64,000 bases of DNA, taken from sequence record NC_062581.1; one strand, written 5' to 3'. A model generated the notes under the pieces. The model was given only the letters and a program-made list of their open reading frames with translations. It was not told the DNA's origin and searched no databases. Positions 1,318-31,522 of the stretch are shown in pieces. Within the stretch, counting starts at the first letter, position 1. Every line of letters starts with the position of its first letter. The position numbers and the translations under genes are program-made.

Positions 1318-3540
1318 ATGAATCTCGATTCACTGTTTAAACACAACGTAGCGAAACAATACACTCGCTTCTCCATGGAAGACTTCCTGGGCAAACTGGA
1401 AACCGAACAGAACTACGCTGACAACCTGCTGGCCAAAGGTAAGAGCCTGGTAGAATACATCAGCCAAGAAAACTTCGGCGACATTAACGAAGCACAACGT
1501 AGCACTGCTGGTGCTCTGTACAAAGATCTCGGTAGCATGCTGAAGACTTTCGGTTTTGAATACTTTGACGAGAAATCGGGCAAAGCACAAATCTCCGAAA
1601 ACCAACAACGCGCTGCTGCTATCGCTGCTATCGCCTGTGCTGATCCAGAAGCTTATAAGAAAGCTCTGCGTTCGGTTGCTAAAGAAGTAGTTTCGAACGA
1701 AGATAACGTCTTCAACGTTCGCCATGAATTTGCTGGTCCTGCTGGTTCCCTGCAAGTATTCCAAGACCACCTGGGTCTGGAAAACTACAACGAAAAATCC
1801 CAACGCGACTTCCGTGTTGTAACTGTTGGTTATAACCTCGAAGCTTCCCGTCAGGACGAGTTCGCTGAACGTCTGTACCCTACTACTGTTGTAAACCCAG
1901 TAGAAGGTGGTGTTGTTCAGGTTCTTCCTTACATCGCTGTAATGAAAGATGTATACCACGCCGTTAGCGGTCAGAAACTGCAAAACGAAGAAGTGAACAT
2001 GGTAGAAGCATACCGTGATCCATCGATCCTGGATGACAACTGCACCGACCTGATCCCTGCTGTTGATCCAGATGGTAGCAACCTGAAGTTCTTCACCGAT
2101 CCTACAGTTGTTCCACACCACGTTGTTACTAACGAACAGAACATGACTATCACCACTGGCCCACTTAAGCCAAACGTGAAAATCGATCTGATGGGTAACT
2201 CGAACGCCAACCTGCTGATCAACAAAGGCATGCTGGACATTTCGGATACTATCGATCCAAGTGGTCGTCTGAAAGCTCTGTACGTCAAGTTCGACGGCAA
2301 GATCATCCGCTTCGTTGTTGACCGTCTGCCTACCGCTGTATTCCAGCCTGGTCTGATCGGCGACACCCGTCAAGCTAAACTGGACTTCATCACTGAAGAC
2401 CTGGTTGTTGGCGAAGACACCAAAGCAATCGACGGTACCGTTTCTGCTAACGTGCAAGAACTGGTTAACCGTAAGTGGACTGCTCGTATCAGCGTTTCGT
2501 TCAACGGCCATGTATCCACTTCCCGTGGTGATGCTCGTTACGGTACTACTGGTATCGAAATCGACCGTATCGTTGACGAAGATCGTAAACTGATCTCGAT
2601 CGAATCTGGCGACGGTAAAGATCTGGTTGACGCCATCGGCGAACTGGAAGTAGTCGGCTACGACCTGGACCTCAAGTTCACCAACACTAACCGCCGTCAG
2701 CGTGGTCACCTGTTGCAAACTCGTGCTATCCAGTTCCGTCACCCAATCCCAATGCACGCTCCGGTAACCCTGCCAATGTCCACTATGGATGAGCAAGGCC
2801 CAGGCGACGTTGTTAAGGCACTGACTGTTAACACCAACATCCGTAACAGCAACAACGCTGTTAAACGTCTGCTGAACTACCTGGCTCAGTTGAAAGAAGT
2901 AGTTGGTAATGGTTACGACCGTCCTAAGTTTGGTGCTGTTGAAGGTGCTCTGAGCATCATGATGCGTCCAACCTACCGTGAAGGCACTCTGCACCTTCCT
3001 GATCACATCGATACCCTGAAATCTCAGGATCGCTGGCAGGACGTTTGCAGCACCATCTTGAACTACGCTAAAGGTATCCTGTTCCCAGCATACCGCGAGT
3101 CCAACATTGAAGCTGCTTTCCGTGTAATCTCGGGTAACCAAGACGAGAAGCCAATGTTCATCTTCGCTACCGACAAAGAAATCGGTAACTACCTGATGAC
3201 CCAAGGCGACGACCGTACTCTGGGCGCAATCCTGGAATACGACCTGGTAACTACCAACAACGAACTGTTCGATGGTAAACTGGTAATCGTTCCTACTCGT
3301 AAGAACCCAACCGAAAACGACATCCTGTCCTTCGGTCAGTTCTTCTACGTATCGACCGTCATCGCCGACCTGCCTATCACTCGTGGTGGCCAGCAAGTGA
3401 CTCGTGAGATCGCAGCTGTTCCGTTCAACCTGCACGTTAACAACATTCCATTCGCTATCAACCTGACCATCACTGGTCTGGAAGAAGTCATGGGCAAATC
3501 TCAGTGGAACAAACCACTGATTTCCGCACTGGCTGCTTGA
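1318..3540 (+). CDS. Major capsid protein (phiKZ gp120-like)
   Basis: 740 aa, extreme high-expression codon bias, strong AAGGA RBS, N-terminal propeptide with SME and GLE maturation motifs; size and synteny fit gp120. Confidence 0.9.
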   Translation: MNLDSLFKHNVAKQYTRFSMEDFLGKLETEQNYADNLLAKGKSLVEYISQENFGDINEAQRSTAGALYKDLGSMLKTFGFEYFDEKSGKAQISENQQRAAAIAAIACADPEAYKKALRSVAKEVVSNEDNVFNVRHEFAGPAGSLQVFQDHLGLENYNEKSQRDFRVVTVGYNLEASRQDEFAERLYPTTVVNPVEGGVVQVLPYIAVMKDVYHAVSGQKLQNEEVNMVEAYRDPSILDDNCTDLIPAVDPDGSNLKFFTDPTVVPHHVVTNEQNMTITTGPLKPNVKIDLMGNSNANLLINKGMLDISDTIDPSGRLKALYVKFDGKIIRFVVDRLPTAVFQPGLIGDTRQAKLDFITEDLVVGEDTKAIDGTVSANVQELVNRKWTARISVSFNGHVSTSRGDARYGTTGIEIDRIVDEDRKLISIESGDGKDLVDAIGELEVVGYDLDLKFTNTNRRQRGHLLQTRAIQFRHPIPMHAPVTLPMSTMDEQGPGDVVKALTVNTNIRNSNNAVKRLLNYLAQLKEVVGNGYDRPKFGAVEGALSIMMRPTYREGTLHLPDHIDTLKSQDRWQDVCSTILNYAKGILFPAYRESNIEAAFRVISGNQDEKPMFIFATDKEIGNYLMTQGDDRTLGAILEYDLVTTNNELFDGKLVIVPTRKNPTENDILSFGQFFYVSTVIADLPITRGGQQVTREIAAVPFNLHVNNIPFAINLTITGLEEVMGKSQWNKPLISALAA

Positions 3541-3624
3541 AGTCAACCGGGAAACGTCCGTCGCTTGGAAGATGGATCAATCCGGTACTCCGAGGACGGT
3601 ACCACCCAGCGGTACCTAGAATGA
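3541..3624 (+). other. In-frame 27-codon extension after the capsid UGA (candidate readthrough product SQPGNVRRLEDGSIRYSEDGTTQRYLE)
   Basis: Same frame as the capsid gene, UGA-A context, no independent start/RBS, lies before the terminator, and its motif matches the C-terminus of 30196..30735. Confidence 0.55.
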
Positions 3625-3626
3625 AA

Positions 3627-3666
3627 GACATAATCGCCTACCCTTCGGGGTAGGCTTTATGTCGTC
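3627..3666. terminator. Hairpin with TATG tail after the capsid gene
   Basis: GACATAATC-GCCTACCC-TTCG-GGGTAGGC-TTTATGTCGTC. Confidence 0.8.
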
Positions 3667-3674
3667 ACTCCAAA

Positions 3675-3698
3675 AAATCTCAGATCTATATTACTATT
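3675..3698 (+). promoter_or_regulatory. Phage early-type promoter, class A
   Basis: AAATCTCAGATCTATATTACTATT, identical to 56758..56781; contains the phiKZ early consensus TATATTAC. Confidence 0.75.
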
Positions 3699-3738
3699 CT
3701 GTAGTTATACCACTAATATAACCCACGAGGTAATCGCT

Positions 3739-4356
3739 ATGGATTATTTTGACCGCTTTGACAAAGTACTCGAAAACAACTTCCATGGTGATTATCGCGC
3801 CATGAAAGATTCCGGTTATCGTTTTGATAGCCTGCAAGGATTACCCTTGCGAATTGTTGAGATAGATCGTCGTCCTAAAAAGGAACCGGTTTATGTCACC
3901 ACACCTGACGTGCAGTTAGATGATGTTATCATACTGCCAGCAGAGGAGCCCACTAATAAAAATGAAGAACTGGATTTCGAAGTAATCGATCTCTCAGCAG
4001 AAATGGATCGTCGGAGAAAAAATACTGGTACAGATAATCCTGTACAACCTGAACCAGTTAGTGAGAATGCTGATTTGAAGCCTCTCGTTTTGTCCGTCAG
4101 ACAGGCGACCAAGCCGTCGTCAAGGGGGGCGGCTATACAAACCCAAACGAGTAAGGCTGCCAAAGATAAACATCTCGCCTCCGGTGGTAACCGAGCCCAG
4201 CGTAGAGCCATCAAAGCGATTAGTCGTAAAGATGGTAAAACGGCAAACAAGGGTCCTCGGGAAAACAGTGATCGAGACAATAGAAGTTCACAAGAAGCCG
4301 ACGCACCGAAACGTGTAAGCTTGAGTGAATTAGATTTCGGGTTTAGGTTGGAATAG
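3739..4356 (+). CDS. Hypothetical protein with basic low-complexity C-terminal half
   Basis: 205 aa, GAGG RBS, first gene after a promoter. Confidence 0.65.
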   Translation: MDYFDRFDKVLENNFHGDYRAMKDSGYRFDSLQGLPLRIVEIDRRPKKEPVYVTTPDVQLDDVIILPAEEPTNKNEELDFEVIDLSAEMDRRRKNTGTDNPVQPEPVSENADLKPLVLSVRQATKPSSRGAAIQTQTSKAAKDKHLASGGNRAQRRAIKAISRKDGKTANKGPRENSDRDNRSSQEADAPKRVSLSELDFGFRLE

Positions 4357-11467: not shown

Positions 11468-11905
11468 TTATGTTAAATCGAACTTCAACGTAAGAACGTA
11501 GGGTGGTAACCAACCCACCGCATCAATCTTAGTTTCTAATTCTACTTCCGTAGCAGTGGGCGATATATTCGTGTGATAGAAATCGTTGTCGTAAAGTGAG
11601 ATTCCATAAACATCACGCAACATGTCAGTAACTTCAGTGGTATTAATGTAATCACCAGGCTTACCCGGAAGAACTAAATCTCTCAGCTCTTCATCAATTC
11701 GATATCGATTGTAGTAGATAGTCGAACTGCCTTTAAATCGAGGCGTATCAGTTAATGCAGTAATAGTCACTTTTGCATTACATGCACCTTGTAACCAAAC
11801 ACCGGCATTAGTAAATGTAACCTCACTAACTTGGATAGCTGGAACAATACCATGCACCCGACTGAACTCAACTAAGAGTTTTTCTTTTGTGTCGTATAAA
11901 TACAT
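11468..11905 (-). CDS. Putative virion structural protein (paralogue family with 11913..12788 and 30196..30735)
   Basis: Start moved to ATG 11905 (MYLYDTKEK); shared Y-x-R-x-x-[LI] core (YYNRYRI, TYDRLNL, VYRRLDL). Confidence 0.6.
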   Translation of the reverse strand: MYLYDTKEKLLVEFSRVHGIVPAIQVSEVTFTNAGVWLQGACNAKVTITALTDTPRFKGSSTIYYNRYRIDEELRDLVLPGKPGDYINTTEVTDMLRDVYGISLYDNDFYHTNISPTATEVELETKIDAVGWLPPYVLTLKFDLT

Positions 11906-11912
11906 GTTAACC

Positions 11913-12788
11913 TCAATCGTAATGCAAACGTAAGAAACCATTAATGCCAGTAGCTAGATCACTAAGTTCAATAACTAACACTCTACGGAACTCTATACGC
12001 GAAGTCCATTTCGTAATAGCCGCACCATTATAAAGAACTTTGCAATGTGGTTCACCTTGTACCAATGAATGAACTACGTTTAACGGCTTTGCTGTAGCGC
12101 TGGCTTGAAACTGAATACCAGTGGTGCGATACAAAGGACCTAACAATTGTTCTGGCTTATGGTACAGACCAACAGGAATACTTTTCAACTCATCCCGATA
12201 CAACGTAAAGTCATAACGACTTACGTAGTAATCACCCCTGATTTTAGTTAGGTCTGGCTTAGGGGTGATATTAGGAAACTCTACATTGAGATTAGGCAAA
12301 GTAGATAGGTTCAATTGAGATGTATTGATCAACCGAATTCGAAGGTGCCCTACAAAACGCAATGACCGAGAATCCGCTTCAAGGATAATGTCATTATCGA
12401 TAGGTAACGAATATTTATCAAACGTCTGATGAATAAAATCGTCAACCTCAAACACAATTTCATTTTGCAAGCCGAGCTGTTCTAAAATATCAAACGTAGT
12501 AATTGGTAAGGTAAGACCAATTACATTCACCGCAATAGTGTTACGAAAGAACTCAGTCAGATTTAGTCGATCGTACGTAAACACAATCTGTGTGATTGGG
12601 GGCATTAAGTTAATCGGGTTAGTTGACCGATTAGGGATGATCTCTATTTGGGTTCTCTTAGAACTTAGTGGAGTCATTGCCTTTAACTTAACAATCCCCG
12701 GCTGAAGTTGAAAGTTGTATTTGTCATTGATCATGTCAATAATAGCTTGCCATGATCCTACCTTGAGGTAGTCACGTGTAATGTACAT
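11913..12788 (-). CDS. Putative virion structural protein (gp127 position)
   Basis: 291 aa in an operon with the 720-aa gene. Confidence 0.65.
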   Translation of the reverse strand: MYITRDYLKVGSWQAIIDMINDKYNFQLQPGIVKLKAMTPLSSKRTQIEIIPNRSTNPINLMPPITQIVFTYDRLNLTEFFRNTIAVNVIGLTLPITTFDILEQLGLQNEIVFEVDDFIHQTFDKYSLPIDNDIILEADSRSLRFVGHLRIRLINTSQLNLSTLPNLNVEFPNITPKPDLTKIRGDYYVSRYDFTLYRDELKSIPVGLYHKPEQLLGPLYRTTGIQFQASATAKPLNVVHSLVQGEPHCKVLYNGAAITKWTSRIEFRRVLVIELSDLATGINGFLRLHYD

Positions 12789-29498: not shown

Positions 29499-29733
29499 GT
29501 GTTACGTTTCTCAACCACCCACTGCAGCTGAAATTATGAATGCTCCACAGCGTTACCGTGTAGTTGGCGTAATGACAGATTGGGAAGCTCGTTTTTTATT
29601 AATGTCGGATCATTGGCTCCTACAAACAGACGCACTAAAGCAATGTAATGATCAAGTGCGCAAATCACGTGAGTGGGTTAACAAACATCGTGGTTTGGAG
29701 AAGCCAAATGAAAATTTCGGAAATCCTGAGTGA
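29386..29733 (+). CDS. Putative o-spanin (Rz1-like lipoprotein)
   Basis: Start ATG 29386: MLVILLALVCWLSG-C lipobox, Pro-rich linker; starts inside the i-spanin gene in another frame. Confidence 0.75.
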   Translation: MLVILLALVCWLSGCTSTTVKPPQNVVSAAMPTVLTSECYVSQPPTAAEIMNAPQRYRVVGVMTDWEARFLLMSDHWLLQTDALKQCNDQVRKSREWVNKHRGLEKPNENFGNPE

Positions 29734-30109
29734 GGTCGACCAGCGTTCTATATCGACTCATCCAACAGCGGCAATGCTAATTGGTTATGTTAATAACGAA
29801 TTAGTTTTGGCCGGAGTGACACCATTAACTTCTACTTCTACCGGAGCTGAGGCTATTGCTGCTATCTACAAAATACCCAGTGAAAAACAAAATATCGTTT
29901 TCCAAAAAGACTTTACGACACTTAGGAAAAAAGATAGTTACAAGTATTTAGTTTTGTCGATGGCCGTGTTAGCTGTACTAGCTGGTTTAGGTTTTGCGGG
30001 TAGTGTTGCTAAGTTGGAAGGTGAGTCTGCAGCAGGAGTTACGGATGTTTTTAAAGTCCTTATTTCTGGTCTGTTTGAAATCGCAAAGTTGCTCATTACA
30101 GGTCAATAA
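29708..30109 (+). CDS. Putative holin-like membrane protein
   Basis: Start ATG 29708; hydrophobic helices in the C-terminal half; lies between the spanins and the endolysin. Confidence 0.5.
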   Translation: MKISEILSEVDQRSISTHPTAAMLIGYVNNELVLAGVTPLTSTSTGAEAIAAIYKIPSEKQNIVFQKDFTTLRKKDSYKYLVLSMAVLAVLAGLGFAGSVAKLEGESAAGVTDVFKVLISGLFEIAKLLITGQ

Positions 30110-30117
30110 AAAATACT

Positions 30118-30150
30118 GTCCGCTCCGTTAAGGGGCGGACTTTATTATGC
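30118..30150 (+). terminator. Hairpin with TATG tail
   Basis: GTCCGCTCC-GTTAA-GGGGCGGAC-TTTATTATGC. Confidence 0.7.
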
Positions 30151-30195
30151 TATGTGGATTAATCAACTTTGTAACCACAGGACCGAGGTTTAAAC

Positions 30196-30735
30196 ATGAT
30201 CACTACAGATCGTTTCCCGTATGACATGCCTTCACGAGATGCCCTTGTGAAGCAGGTGAATACAGACTTGAAACGGAGCTATAAAGCCGACCAAGTCAGT
30301 TTTGAAGATATGTTCTTTGCCCCGCTGCCAGCCATCCCTGGACGTACTTTTATCGAGATGACTAACCGCCTAACTGGGCTGAAAGAATTCTTTGTTTACC
30401 GTCGTTTAGATCTGGCACACTCCAAGGCGCTGGGCACCACCACCCGTATTAAAATTGTAGGTCTACCTACGCCTGCTAATATTGCTAATGAAATCAACCG
30501 TAGTCGCAAGATGACTTTCGGTCCTGATGACATTTCTTTTTCTACTGTTGTGATCAACAACAAAGAAACTAGCTTTGTTTACCGTGTTGAAGCAATGACC
30601 GGCAGCTACGCTTACTTTGGTTACACTGACATTACTGTAGAAGTGGTTGAGTCTAATCCAAATGCGCGTTACCTAGAAGACGGTGATCCACGCTTAATGG
30701 AAACCGGCGATATTCGTGAACTCGAACACGCTTGA
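30196..30735 (+). CDS. Putative virion structural protein with C-terminal R-x-x-E-[DT]-G repeats
   Basis: 179 aa ending ARYLEDGDPRLMETGDIRELEHA. Confidence 0.7.
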   Translation: MITTDRFPYDMPSRDALVKQVNTDLKRSYKADQVSFEDMFFAPLPAIPGRTFIEMTNRLTGLKEFFVYRRLDLAHSKALGTTTRIKIVGLPTPANIANEINRSRKMTFGPDDISFSTVVINNKETSFVYRVEAMTGSYAYFGYTDITVEVVESNPNARYLEDGDPRLMETGDIRELEHA

Positions 30736-30745
30736 GGAATATGAC

Positions 30746-31522
30746 ATGGCCGCATTAAAGAAAGGCGATACGGGTGATGCTGTTTTAGAACTACAGCAGG
30801 CATTGGTACGTAAAGGTTTTAAACTTGAACCAGACGGTAAGTTTGGTCAAGCCACGTATGACGCAGTTGTTGCATTCCAAAAAGCATGCAATTTAGACTC
30901 CGATGGCGTAGCAAGTAAAAACACATTGTCCGCTTTAGCATTAGTAAAAGAATCTATCCTGGATAGCATTCCAATGCCATCAGCAAATCGATCACGATCC
31001 GCTGCAATGCCTACACTTGAAGCAATCGGTAAGATTACTTCCGTTAGTGCTAAGACATTGGCTACGTTTGCTTCTATCGAATCTAATTTTGATTACACCG
31101 TTAAAGCATCTACATCGAGTGCTACTGGTTGGTTCCAACATCTGGACAAAACCTGGGATGACATGTTGAAGCTAACGTTTAATCAATACGGATTAGTTGA
31201 CAACGCTAAACGTTCACTGCGTATTGATCCACGAGCCAATGGCTTGATGGGTGCAGAACTATTGAAAGACAATGCCCGTATTTTACGTCCAGCATTGGGG
31301 CATGAACCAACCGATACAGAGCTATACGCTGCACACTTCTTTGGTGTGGGTGCTGCTAAGAAGTTCCTGTTGGCTAATCCTGCCGCTAGTGGCGCAGAAC
31401 TGTTTCCAAAACAAGCTGCTGCCAACGTTGGTATTTTCTATGCACGTGATAAGAAGACACCGCTTACAATTGGTGCCATCTTGAATCTGTTCGAATCTAA
31501 GGTTGCTAGTCATCGAGGCTAA
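30746..31522 (+). CDS. Modular endolysin: peptidoglycan-binding domain plus lytic transglycosylase (phiKZ gp144-like)
   Basis: LKKGDTGDAVLELQQAL..DGKFGQAT PG-binding repeat; IESNF catalytic Glu, SATGWFQ, LYAAHFFG; start ATG 30746. Confidence 0.92.
   Translation: MAALKKGDTGDAVLELQQALVRKGFKLEPDGKFGQATYDAVVAFQKACNLDSDGVASKNTLSALALVKESILDSIPMPSANRSRSAAMPTLEAIGKITSVSAKTLATFASIESNFDYTVKASTSSATGWFQHLDKTWDDMLKLTFNQYGLVDNAKRSLRIDPRANGLMGAELLKDNARILRPALGHEPTDTELYAAHFFGVGAAKKFLLANPAASGAELFPKQAAANVGIFYARDKKTPLTIGAILNLFESKVASHRG

What the first reader, a model, noticed from the sequence alone, without database searches (positions are those of the whole stretch)
3538..3624. Probable UGA readthrough giving a C-terminally extended major capsid protein with an RxxEDG repeat module
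Seen: the capsid gene stops at GCT TGA AGT. The same frame then runs 27 sense codons (SQPGNVRRLEDGSIRYSEDGTTQRYLE) to a second TGA at 3622-3624, immediately before the terminator, so the segment is inside the capsid mRNA. It has no RBS and no usable start (only an internal TTG). VRRLEDGSIRYSEDGTTQRYLE closely matches the C-terminus of 30196..30735 (ARYLEDGDPRLMETGDIRELE), which is hard to explain as random intergenic DNA. Established: UGA is the leakiest bacterial stop, and minor extended capsid forms exist (Qbeta A1 by readthrough, T7 gp10B by frameshift). Inference: a minority of capsid subunits carry a surface docking or decoration tag. I know of no report of this for phiKZ-like phages. Caveat: the extension uses rare codons (CGG, CTA, GGA), which fits low-level expression but also a decaying remnant.
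Basis: partly seen in the sequence, partly recalled or inferred. Interest (0 to 1): 0.85.

Follow-up and report, generated by a model that had tools for sequence, protein, structure and literature searches.

The report
Hidden read-through tail on jumbo-phage capsid protein
The capsid gene of phage Psa21, like those of phiKZ and all its close relatives, ends in a leaky UGA stop followed by a conserved in-frame 27-codon tail, so a minority of capsid subunits probably carry a short repeat peptide that has gone unnoticed in this well-studied phage group.

Summary
The window is Pseudomonas phage Psa21. Its major capsid gene (1318-3540) stops at TGA. Then 27 in-frame sense codons (3541-3621) run to a second TGA, 11 nt before a terminator hairpin.

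This is not chance. In every member of the phiKZ clade that keeps the tail (24 distinct sequences, including phiKZ, 201phi2-1, phiPA3, Phabio and Noxifer), a 24-30 codon in-frame tail follows the capsid stop. It carries the motif R-x-x-E-D-G-x-x-R-x-x-E-D-G-x-x-R-x-L-E.
- The first stop is TGA in 23 of the 24.
- Only frame 0 is open.
- Length changes are multiples of three.
- Invariant Gly and Arg positions use several synonymous codons.
- omega = 0.43, and omega = 1 is rejected (2dlnL = 33).

Two other chimallivirus clades pair TGA with a different conserved tail. Capsid genes without a tail end in TAA or TGA-T.

The same module ends the phiKZ gp143 homolog (30196-30735). That protein is a DUF7941 virion protein, and DUF7941 proteins are proposed to polymerise head to tail.

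The best explanation is UGA readthrough making a minor extended capsid subunit that displays a docking peptide. No protein-level evidence exists yet, and I found no report of it.

The parts
1318..3540 (+). Major capsid protein gene (phiKZ gp120 homolog, 740 aa)
   Evidence: The record annotates it as 'major capsid protein' PSA21_170. It matches PHROG 3231, major head protein, at E 5.8e-241. Homologs carry Pfam PF25620 PhiKZ_MCP.
3538..3540 (+). Candidate leaky stop codon UGA, followed by A
   Evidence: 38 of 39 distinct tail-bearing capsid 3' ends have TGA, and the base after the stop is A, G or C but never T. Of 24 ends without a tail, 22 have TAA and 2 have TGA-T (Fisher p 1e-13, not corrected for relatedness). 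In window ORFs only 23% of stops are TGA.
3541..3621 (+). 27-codon in-frame extension SQPGNVRRLEDGSIRYSEDGTTQRYLE, with no start codon or RBS of its own
   Evidence: Frame 0 is open in 20 of 20 relatives, while frames +1 and +2 carry stops. omega is 0.43 and omega = 1 is rejected with 2dlnL = 33.2. Invariant Gly and Arg positions use several synonymous codons, including both CGN and AGR for Arg.
3559..3621 (+). Repeat module R-x-x-E-D-G (twice) plus R-x-L-E, with a period of 8-9 residues
   Evidence: It aligns without gaps to the gp143-family C-terminal tail. It scores 27.6 bits against an HMM built from gp143 tails alone.
3622..3624 (+). Second stop codon (TGA here)
   Evidence: In relatives this stop varies between TAA, TAG and TGA, unlike the first stop.
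3636..3661 (+). Intrinsic-terminator-like hairpin GCCTACCC-TTCG-GGGTAGGC followed by TTTATG
   Evidence: Found by the terminator scan. A hairpin plus TTTATG(Y)CGT is present at the same place in all relatives.
3682..3694 (+). Conserved box AGATCTATATTAC upstream of the next gene (probable phage promoter); marks the end of the capsid transcription unit
   Evidence: It is invariant in Psa21, D6, RVTF4 and phiKZ. There is no sigma-70 match here.
30196..30735 (+). phiKZ gp143 homolog: a DUF7941 N-terminal domain followed by a C-terminal RxxEDG tail (tail at 30667-30726)
   Evidence: tblastn places it with PHIKZ143, annotated as a virion structural protein. Pfam DUF7941 matches. The AF2 model's N-terminal domain matches the phiKZ baseplate chain 9xqd at E 1.2e-6. 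The tail is conserved in 50 homologs, with R158, R166 and R174 invariant.

Best explanation
The 27 codons after the capsid gene are translated. A fraction of ribosomes decode the UGA at 3538-3540 with a near-cognate tRNA, by analogy most likely tRNA-Trp, and continue in frame to the second stop at 3622-3624. This makes a minor capsid isoform about 3 kDa longer.

In phiKZ the last residues of the capsid protein sit at the centre of each hexamer, and in pentamers they touch the outer decoration protein gp244. The tail should therefore project from the outside of the capsid at scattered capsomers.

The tail is a three-fold repeat, R-x-L-E-D-G-x-x. The same peptide ends gp143, a virion-associated DUF7941 protein. 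I propose that it is a docking peptide. Either it is bound by a DUF7941 N-terminal domain, in the way those proteins are predicted to chain head to tail, or both tails bind one common partner. In either case a few capsid subunits would be tied to gp143 or DUF7941 fibres, or to that partner.

Shown here: the in-frame arrangement, protein-level purifying selection, the link between UGA and the tail, and the homology of the tail to gp143 tails.
Inferred: the readthrough itself, its efficiency, the outside location, and the binding partner.
For: Conservation:
- Psa21, D6, RVTF4, phiKZ/PA7, HPP-Temi, Phabio, phiPA3, 201phi2-1, Noxifer and about 15 uncultured relatives all have TGA followed by 24-30 in-frame codons with the module.

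Coding signature:
- Only frame 0 is open.
- The distance from the conserved capsid NKP motif to the first Arg varies between 15 and 18 codons, always by whole codons.
- Pairwise dN/dS is mostly 0.1-0.5.
- The codon model gives omega 0.43, with lnL -1150.4 against -1167.0 at omega = 1.
- The invariant Gly at alignment column 12 uses all four GGN codons, and the Arg at column 16 uses CGG, CGT, AGG and AGA.
- The third codon position is the most variable.

Stop codon:
- 38 of 39 tail-bearing ends have TGA, never followed by T.
- 22 of 24 tail-less ends have TAA, and the other two have TGA-T.
- The second stop varies freely.

Generality:
- RP12-like phages and Goslar pair TGA-A with a different conserved tail..D-L-x-G-F-x-x-Y-S-G.
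- Two relatives have a Big_2 Ig-like domain in frame behind the stop.

Codon usage breaks sharply at the stop, as expected for a rarely translated segment.

Module identity:
- The capsid tails align with and score against gp143 tails.
- gp143 belongs to DUF7941 and is a virion protein by mass spectrometry (annotations).
- DUF7941 proteins are predicted and partly shown to form head-to-tail filaments through the stretch after the N-terminal domain (preprint 10.64898/2026.04.21.720040).

Capsid geometry comes from PMC11297242.
Against: - There is no direct evidence of the extended protein. Published phiKZ capsid maps model gp120 to its annotated end (residue 747) and mention no extra density. 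No proteomic report of the tail was found, although searches against annotated proteins could not have seen it.
- The tail is dispensable in nature. Two relatives, L095 (98% identical capsid) and L100, have lost it.
- One relative (L105) has TAA-C in front of a Big_2 plus RxxEDG ORF. UAA is a poor readthrough codon.
- omega = 0.43 is looser than for the capsid body (pN/pS 0.24 against 0.64 uncorrected). The first six codons vary freely.
- The docking partner is pure inference. The AF2 model gives the gp143 tail only pLDDT of about 68, and no complex could be modelled.
- gp143 has also been described as a cytoplasmic lysis regulator (PMC12894885) rather than a fibre protein.
Confidence: 0.75

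Rival explanations
1. The segment is a conserved non-coding 3' UTR element, such as an RNA structure that stabilises the capsid mRNA, aids termination or acts as a small RNA. On this view the open frame is incidental.
For: The segment lies between a stop codon and a terminator. RNAalifold finds a possible stem between CCGUC and GACGG that is present in all sequences. Codon usage is poor.
Against: - The covariation term is only -0.1 kcal/mol, and the stem pairs are invariant, so they say nothing either way.
- There is no Rfam match at E <= 1.
- The substitutions look like coding sequence: the third position varies most, there are synonymous switches including CGN to AGR, indels are whole codons, only one frame is open, and omega < 1.
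- An RNA element would not explain why the peptide matches the C-terminus of a real protein family, nor why the first stop must be TGA.
Confidence: 0.05
2. The segment is a separate small gene whose 20-27 residue peptide is started independently, by a non-canonical start or by reinitiation after the capsid stop. It would not be a capsid fusion.
For: Psa21 has an internal TTG. In one relative (L108) the in-frame downstream ORF has an ATG 7 nt after the stop and was called as a separate gene. Many free-standing 44-70 residue ORFs ending in the same module exist in metagenomes.
Against: - No start codon or Shine-Dalgarno sequence is conserved. Codon 9 is TTG, TAC, CAA or CTA in different relatives.
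- The tail is locked to the capsid frame in every lineage, despite indels on both sides of the stop.
- An independent ORF would not need the upstream stop to be TGA without a following T.
Confidence: 0.08
3. The segment is the decaying remnant of a once longer capsid C-terminus, cut off by a nonsense mutation and no longer expressed.
For: Rare codons are used. The tail has been lost in two lineages. Relatives with larger in-frame domains behind the stop could represent the ancestral state.
Against: A dead segment would evolve at omega = 1 and pick up stops and frameshifts. Instead omega = 0.43 with omega = 1 rejected. The frame stays intact across lineages whose synonymous divergence exceeds 1. 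The motif residues are invariant or nearly so.
Confidence: 0.03
4. UGA is fully reassigned or specifically recoded here, by a phage suppressor tRNA or as selenocysteine, so that all capsid subunits carry the tail.
For: Psa21, D6 and RVTF4 encode their own tRNA-Trp.
Against: - The phage tRNA-Trp has the ordinary CCA anticodon, and none of the Psa21 tRNAs has a UCA anticodon.
- 15 of 65 long ORFs in the window end in TGA, many in ATGA overlaps, so TGA works as a stop.
- phiKZ-type genomes have the tail but no similar tRNA-Trp.
- No SECIS-like Rfam match was found.
- The phiKZ capsid model ends at the annotated C-terminus.
Confidence: 0.04

Closest known systems
Qbeta A1 (readthrough) protein of Allolevivirus
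   Same: The coat gene ends in a leaky UGA.
   Different: Qbeta is a small ssRNA phage. Its extension is a folded domain of nearly 200 residues and is essential. Here the phage is a 305 kb dsDNA jumbo phage with an HK97-fold capsid protein, and the tail is a 24-30 residue repeat peptide that some natural relatives have lost.
Recoded capsid extensions made by frameshifting (T7 gp10B, T3 10B, Listeria phages A118/A500/PSA, Lactobacillus phage A2)
   Same: One capsid gene yields a major product and a minor C-terminally extended product, and both are built into the capsid (review PMC5009743).
   Different: Those cases use -1 or +1 frameshifting at slippery sites. Here the extension is in frame behind a stop codon, so no frameshift is needed.
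Ig-like (Big_2) domains added to phage structural proteins, often by recoding (Fraser et al. 2006, cited in PMC5009743)
   Same: In two relatives the in-frame ORF behind the capsid stop encodes a Big_2 domain (L105 Pfam E 4.7e-7; L108 E 4.9e-8). In L105 the domain is followed by the same RxxEDG tail.
   Different: The Psa21/phiKZ tail has no Ig-like domain, only the repeat peptide.
DUF7941 proteins of chimalliviruses (Goslar gp22/gp23; phiKZ gp126, gp127, gp143)
   Same: The capsid tail matches the stretch that follows the DUF7941 N-terminal domain in the gp143 family. In Goslar the corresponding stretch is predicted to dock on the next protomer's N-terminal domain.
   Different: The capsid extension has no DUF7941 domain. 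The other two DUF7941 proteins in the window (11913-12788 and 11468-11941, minus strand) lack the RxxEDG motif. Docking of this particular peptide has not been tested.

Membership tests
Programmed stop-codon readthrough (Qbeta A1 type) | A weak stop codon (UGA) in a weak context is conserved at the end of the upstream ORF | tested here: met
   38 of 39 distinct tail-bearing ends have TGA, followed by A, G or C and never by T. Tail-less ends have TAA or TGA-T. The second stop varies.
Programmed stop-codon readthrough (Qbeta A1 type) | A downstream ORF lies in the same frame, without its own start, and is under purifying selection as protein | tested here: met
   Only frame 0 is open in 20 of 20 relatives. 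No start is conserved. omega is 0.43 with omega = 1 rejected. Conserved residues show synonymous codon switches.
Programmed stop-codon readthrough (Qbeta A1 type) | The extended protein is detected and its readthrough efficiency measured | not testable with these tools
   This needs proteomics, a western blot, ribosome profiling or a reporter assay. No such data were found in the literature.
Frameshift-derived capsid extension (T7 gp10B type) | The extension is encoded in the -1 or +1 frame and reached at a slippery site before the stop | tested here: not met
   The conserved peptide is in frame 0. Frames +1 and +2 carry stops in most relatives.
Selenocysteine recoding | A SECIS hairpin lies just after the UGA | tested here: not met
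   No Rfam family matches 3400-3800 at E <= 1. No covarying structure follows the stop.
Ig-like domain decoration of phage structural proteins | A Big_2, I-set or FN3 domain sits at the C-terminal extension | tested here: not met
   The Psa21 tail gives no Pfam match. Big_2 is present only in the relatives L105 and L108.
DUF7941 (PF25613) family | A DUF7941 N-terminal globular domain is present | tested here: not met
   The 27-residue tail is too short and has no match. The domain is present in ORF 30196-30735, whose tail the capsid extension resembles.
DUF7941 (PF25613) family | The post-domain stretch docks on another protomer's N-terminal domain (head-to-tail assembly) | not testable with these tools
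   Only single-chain prediction of unmodified sequences is available. The gp143 tail is modelled at pLDDT of about 68 with periodic beta bridges.

The most novel reading that the evidence does not exclude
Capsids of phiKZ-like phages are not smooth shells. A recoded minority of capsid subunits display an RxxEDG peptide at capsomer centres. This peptide is the same handle that DUF7941 proteins use to chain together. It could anchor gp143 or DUF7941 filaments on the head, or couple finished capsids to the gp143-holin lysis timer.

More broadly, UGA readthrough of the capsid gene would be an ancestral and modular feature of Chimalliviridae. Different clades hang different cargo on it: the RxxEDG tail, the DLxGF tail or Ig-like domains. 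In the Psa21 subgroup it may be boosted by a phage tRNA-Trp that carries the D-arm state of the classical UGA suppressor.
Probability: 0.22. Interest if true: 0.88.

Novelty: new variant of a known kind. Interest (0 to 1): 0.78.

Why it matters
phiKZ is the reference nucleus-forming jumbo phage. Its capsid has been solved at 3.5 A and its virion proteome has been catalogued several times. Even so, a conserved second form of its most abundant protein seems to have been missed, because the tail lies behind an annotated stop.

Stop-codon readthrough that builds a structural variant is textbook for the RNA phage Qbeta. I know of no established case for the major capsid protein of a tailed dsDNA phage, where frameshifting is the known route.

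The finding yields a precise hypothesis that is cheap to test: re-search existing mass-spectrometry data and make one point mutant. It also links three loose ends:
- gp143 is found in virions but is absent from the structural atlas.
- A role has recently been proposed for DUF7941 filaments.
- An uncharacterised [RLLEDGxx]n peptide is widespread in phage structural proteins.

It also shows that gene callers systematically truncate these capsid genes.

Tried and rejected
- **RNA-structure explanation.** RNAalifold on 10 relatives gave almost no covariation, and Rfam gave nothing.
- **Independent small ORF.** No start or RBS is conserved.
- **Direct capsid-tail fusions without a stop.** None was found among 120 capsid representatives in the 5.8-billion-protein collection. 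Their C-termini end mostly in Pro, Ala or Gly and none carries the motif.
- **Suppressor tRNA.** The window has no tRNA. All 8 annotated tRNAs of the record lie in its last 50 kb, where ARAGORN finds 9, none with a UCA anticodon.
- **Known Pfam repeat.** The tail matches nothing, even at E <= 10.
- **Metagenome scan for more relatives.** It returned only 7 loci, so I looked up divergent capsid proteins one by one instead.
- **Genomic context of the small RLLE-ended ORFs and of an 826-residue protein ending in the module.** These lie in phage structural regions, with a portal gene nearby, but the context was otherwise uninformative. The source collections carry no names for them.
- **Co-evolution between each phage's capsid tail and its own gp143 tail.** By eye, phiKZ has ENG in both tails, but phiPA3 and 201phi2-1 do not agree. 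I did not pursue this.
- **Structure prediction of a capsid-plus-tail fusion or a tail-gp143 complex.** Not attempted. The operators exclude proteins read through a stop, and the tool folds single unmodified chains only.
Full report
**What is there.** The window is Pseudomonas phage Psa21 (MK552327; window position 1 = record position 124001). The ORF 1318-3540 is the major capsid protein, the homolog of phiKZ gp120. It ends GCT GCT TGA (3538-3540). The same frame then runs through 27 sense codons, SQPGNVRRLEDGSIRYSEDGTTQRYLE (3541-3621), to a second TGA (3622-3624). Eleven bases later comes a GC-rich hairpin (3636-3655) followed by TTTATG. There is no ATG or GTG in the segment. The single TTG, at codon 9, is replaced by TAC, CAA or CTA in relatives.

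**Is it more than chance?** An open run of 27 codons means little on its own. The comparison with relatives is what matters. I collected the 3' end of the capsid gene from GenBank phages and from IMG/VR, JGI, ENA and Logan contigs.

Within the Pseudomonas phiKZ clade the capsid gene ends in TGA, followed in frame by 24-30 sense codons bearing the same motif. This holds for Psa21, D6, RVTF4, phiKZ/PA7, HPP-Temi, Phabio, phiPA3, 201phi2-1, Noxifer and about 15 uncultured genomes. Examples:
- phiKZ: AGKGYRYLENGTIRYLEDGNARKLEE
- 201phi2-1: TGKGGFRYMEDGTTVRYEESGIARRLER
- Noxifer: LPAAPSSRKFEDGSLRSTEGGVPRTLES

**Evidence that the tail is read as protein, in the capsid frame.**
- Frame 0 is open in 20 of 20 distinct sequences, while frames +1 and +2 carry scattered stops.
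- All length differences, on both sides of the stop, are whole codons. The distance from the conserved capsid motif NKP to the first Arg of the module is 15, 17 or 18 codons in different lineages. Downstream of the second stop, gaps of 1 or 2 bases are common.
- The residues that never change are encoded by changing codons. The Gly at alignment column 12 uses GGA, GGT, GGC and GGG. The Gly at column 21 uses three codons. The Arg at column 16 uses CGG, CGT, AGG and AGA. The Arg at column 25 uses five codons.
- The third codon position is the most variable.
- Pairwise dN/dS is mostly 0.1-0.5, even between lineages whose synonymous sites are saturated.
- A codon model gives omega = 0.43, and fixing omega = 1 costs 16.6 log-likelihood units (2dlnL = 33.2, 1 d.f.).
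- RNAalifold finds only invariant pairs, with a covariation term of -0.1. Rfam finds nothing.

A conserved non-coding element or a dead remnant does not fit these data.

**The stop codon itself is constrained.** Across 64 distinct capsid 3' ends from several chimallivirus clades:
- 39 carry a conserved in-frame tail. Of these, 38 have TGA. The base after the stop is A (29), G (7) or C (2), and never T.
- 24 have no tail. Of these, 22 have TAA and the other two have TGA followed by T, which is the strongest termination context in E. coli (own knowledge).
- The second stop of the tail varies between TAA, TAG and TGA within the same lineages.

In the window only 23% of long ORFs end in TGA, many of them in ATGA overlaps. 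A highly expressed gene would be expected to use TAA.

Two close relatives that have lost the tail also have TAA-T: L095, whose capsid protein is 98% identical to that of Psa21, and L100. So TGA goes with the tail and TAA goes with its absence.

The pattern extends beyond this clade. RP12-like phages have TGA-A followed by a different conserved tail (for example RTRLVDVTDLGGFQIYSG and TQGMVNVHDLNGFTPYSG; RP12 itself has RIGNTSPDGFNEFGA). Goslar has TGA-A followed by 28 codons containing ADGF.

Two more distant members of the phiKZ capsid family carry an Ig-like Big_2 domain in frame behind the stop:
- In L108 it starts with the same Lys-Gly as the short tails.
- In L105 it is followed by LRLTEDGEMRTTEDGTPRYSEL, the same module, and then by a terminator. 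No separate gene was called there.

Ig-like domains are the classical cargo of recoded coat-protein extensions in other phages (PMC5009743).

**Mechanism.** The simplest reading is leaky termination at UGA, decoded by a near-cognate tRNA. In Qbeta this is tRNA-Trp (own knowledge). I found no dedicated signal:
- The last sense codon is usually GCN or CCN, and the stop is followed by a purine-rich stretch.
- A possible but unproven stem lies between codons 6-8 and 19-21.

Codon usage breaks abruptly at the stop. The capsid gene has no CGG, CTA or GGA in 740 codons, while the tail has five of them in 27. That fits a segment translated by only a small share of ribosomes.

There is no suppressor tRNA. 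All 8 annotated tRNAs of the Psa21 record lie in its last 50 kb, and none has a UCA anticodon.

Psa21, D6 and RVTF4 do encode their own tRNA-Trp(CCA), kept functional by compensatory changes in its stems. Its D-stem reads GUUC/GAAC, that is U11:A24. From memory, this is the state produced by the G24A Hirsh mutation that turns E. coli tRNA-Trp into a UGA suppressor. I could not compare it with the host tRNA. phiKZ-type genomes have the tail but no such tRNA. It can therefore be at most a booster, not the cause.

**What the tail may do.** The only other place in the window with the doubled motif is the C-terminus of ORF 30196-30735. This is the homolog of phiKZ gp143. In 50 homologs the last 25 residues are R-x-L-E-D-G-x-x-R-L-x-E-x-G-x-x-R-E-L-E-H, with three invariant Arg spaced exactly 8 apart. 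Capsid tails and gp143 tails align without gaps. An HMM made from gp143 tails alone picks out the capsid tail as the best other match in the window.

What is known about gp143:
- It is listed as a virion protein in phiKZ, and in 201phi2-1 it was found in virions by mass spectrometry.
- It is absent from the structural atlas of the phiKZ virion.
- It is non-essential by transposon sequencing.
- It has been described as a regulator of the holin gp142 (PMC12894885).
- It belongs to Pfam DUF7941. My AF2 model (pLDDT 85) matches the gp127 N-terminal domain in the phiKZ baseplate structure (9xqd, E 1.2e-6).

The Goslar preprint reports that DUF7941 proteins form filaments. Its predicted head-to-tail contact is made by the stretch that follows the N-terminal domain. 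In gp143 that stretch is the RxxEDG tail.

In the phiKZ capsid, the C-terminal arms of six gp120 subunits form a helix bundle around a 9 A pore at the hexamer centre. In pentamers they reach the external protein gp244 (PMC11297242).

Putting this together, I infer that the tail projects outward from a few capsomers and acts as a docking peptide, either for a DUF7941 N-terminal domain or for a partner it shares with gp143. This part is inference only. The tail of the gp143 model has just medium confidence, with periodic beta bridges, and a complex could not be modelled.

**The module is widespread.** A profile of the module, searched against 1.84 billion representative proteins, found 68 hits at E <= 0.001:
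- gp143-like proteins.
- A 454-residue DUF7941 protein with the module right after the N-terminal domain.
- Many 44-70 residue ORFs ending exactly in ...RLLEDGxFRLLEDGxFRLLE.
- Large phage structural proteins, including one where six copies of the module sit directly before a capsid cement-protein domain (PF09956), a gpJ-like tail protein, and an FN3 protein ending in the module.

So this is an uncharacterised peptide that recurs in phage particle proteins, usually at a C-terminus or between a particle-binding domain and outward-facing domains.

**Weak points.**
- No protein-level evidence exists. The published maps and proteomes do not mention the tail, although searches against annotated proteins could not have found it.
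- The tail is dispensable in at least two natural lineages.
- One relative (L105) has TAA-C before a long in-frame ORF. Readthrough explains that case poorly. It may be a recent change or may be expressed in another way.
- omega is higher than for the capsid body.
- Efficiency, location and partner are all unknown.

**Comparison with what is known, and verdict.** The tail works like the Qbeta A1 protein: a leaky UGA at the end of a coat gene produces a minor extended coat subunit. It also resembles the frameshift-derived capsid variants of T7, T3 and several Gram-positive phages. It is not a frameshift case, because the tail is in frame 0, and it is not selenocysteine recoding.

I found no report of readthrough in the capsid gene of phiKZ-like phages. 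I rate it a new variant of a known kind:
- High confidence (about 0.75) that the tail is translated as a capsid extension.
- Low to moderate confidence (about 0.3) in the proposed docking role.

Interest is high. The system is a model phage, the feature is conserved across the clade and apparently overlooked, and the test is simple.

Noticed in passing
L057-L090 (RP12-like capsid loci), L054-L056 (Goslar): A second type of post-capsid tail. In RP12-like phages TGA-A is followed in frame by 15-20 codons with the conserved motif V-x-V-x-D-L-x-G-F-x-x-Y-S-G. Goslar has TGA-A plus 28 codons containing ADGF. Relatives in the same set with TAA have no conserved tail.
   Followed up: partly
L105:2663-2953 and L108:3869-4477: Two divergent members of the phiKZ capsid family have a Big_2 Ig-like domain in frame directly behind the capsid stop. 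In L105 it follows TAA-C, has no called gene, and ends in the RxxEDG module. In L108 it follows TGA-A and was called as a separate 201-residue gene whose ATG lies 7 nt after the stop.
   Followed up: partly
L095:1304-1360 and L100:1292-1300: Natural loss of the tail. A contig whose capsid protein is 98% identical to that of Psa21 has TAA-T, and most of the tail is deleted. Another relative, at 74% identity, also has TAA-T and no tail.
   Followed up: partly
L111:36802-36877 (minus strand; Psa21 record 292062-292137), L112, L113: Psa21, D6 and RVTF4 encode a tRNA-Trp(CCA) whose D-stem is GUUC/GAAC (U11:A24). From memory, this is the state of the Hirsh G24A UGA-suppressor form of E. coli tRNA-Trp. 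Compensatory stem changes show the gene is kept functional. Similar tRNA-Trp genes occur in only 8 Pseudomonas phage records and not in phiKZ. It was not compared with the host tRNA.
   Followed up: partly
P0173-P0239 (search of 1.84 billion representative proteins): The peptide [R-L-L-E-D-G-x-x]n-R-L-L-E is widespread. Many 44-70 residue ORFs end exactly in it. It also occurs before a Phage_cement_2 domain (P0178), in a gpJ-like tail protein (P0232), after an FN3 domain (P0224), and after a DUF7941 domain (P0208). No Pfam family covers it.
   Followed up: partly
window 11468-11941 (-) and 11913-12788 (-): Two further DUF7941 proteins, probable homologs of phiKZ gp126 and gp127. They match Pfam at E 2.2e-8 and 6.8e-20. 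Neither has the RxxEDG module.
   Followed up: partly
window 3656-3665 and 3682-3694; same places in L002-L004 and most other loci: The terminator hairpin after the capsid gene is always followed by TTTATG(Y)CGT, even in Goslar and RP12-like phages. It contains TATG, which I recall as the core of phiKZ late promoters. The box AGATCTATATTAC further on is invariant from Psa21 to phiKZ.
   Followed up: no
L016:1457-1600 (HPP-Temi) and P0057, P0061-P0063: Annotation oddities. HPP-Temi has a 47-residue 'hypothetical protein' annotated across the capsid stop in another frame. Several JGI capsid homologs are named 'virulence-associated protein VapD', which looks like a mislabel.
   Followed up: no
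window 29648-31522: The phiKZ lysis cassette order is conserved in Psa21: a holin-like gp142 homolog (29648-30109), the gp143 homolog (30196-30735) and an endolysin with peptidoglycan-binding and transglycosylase domains (30716/30746-31522). The gp143 stop lies inside or just before the endolysin start.
   Followed up: no
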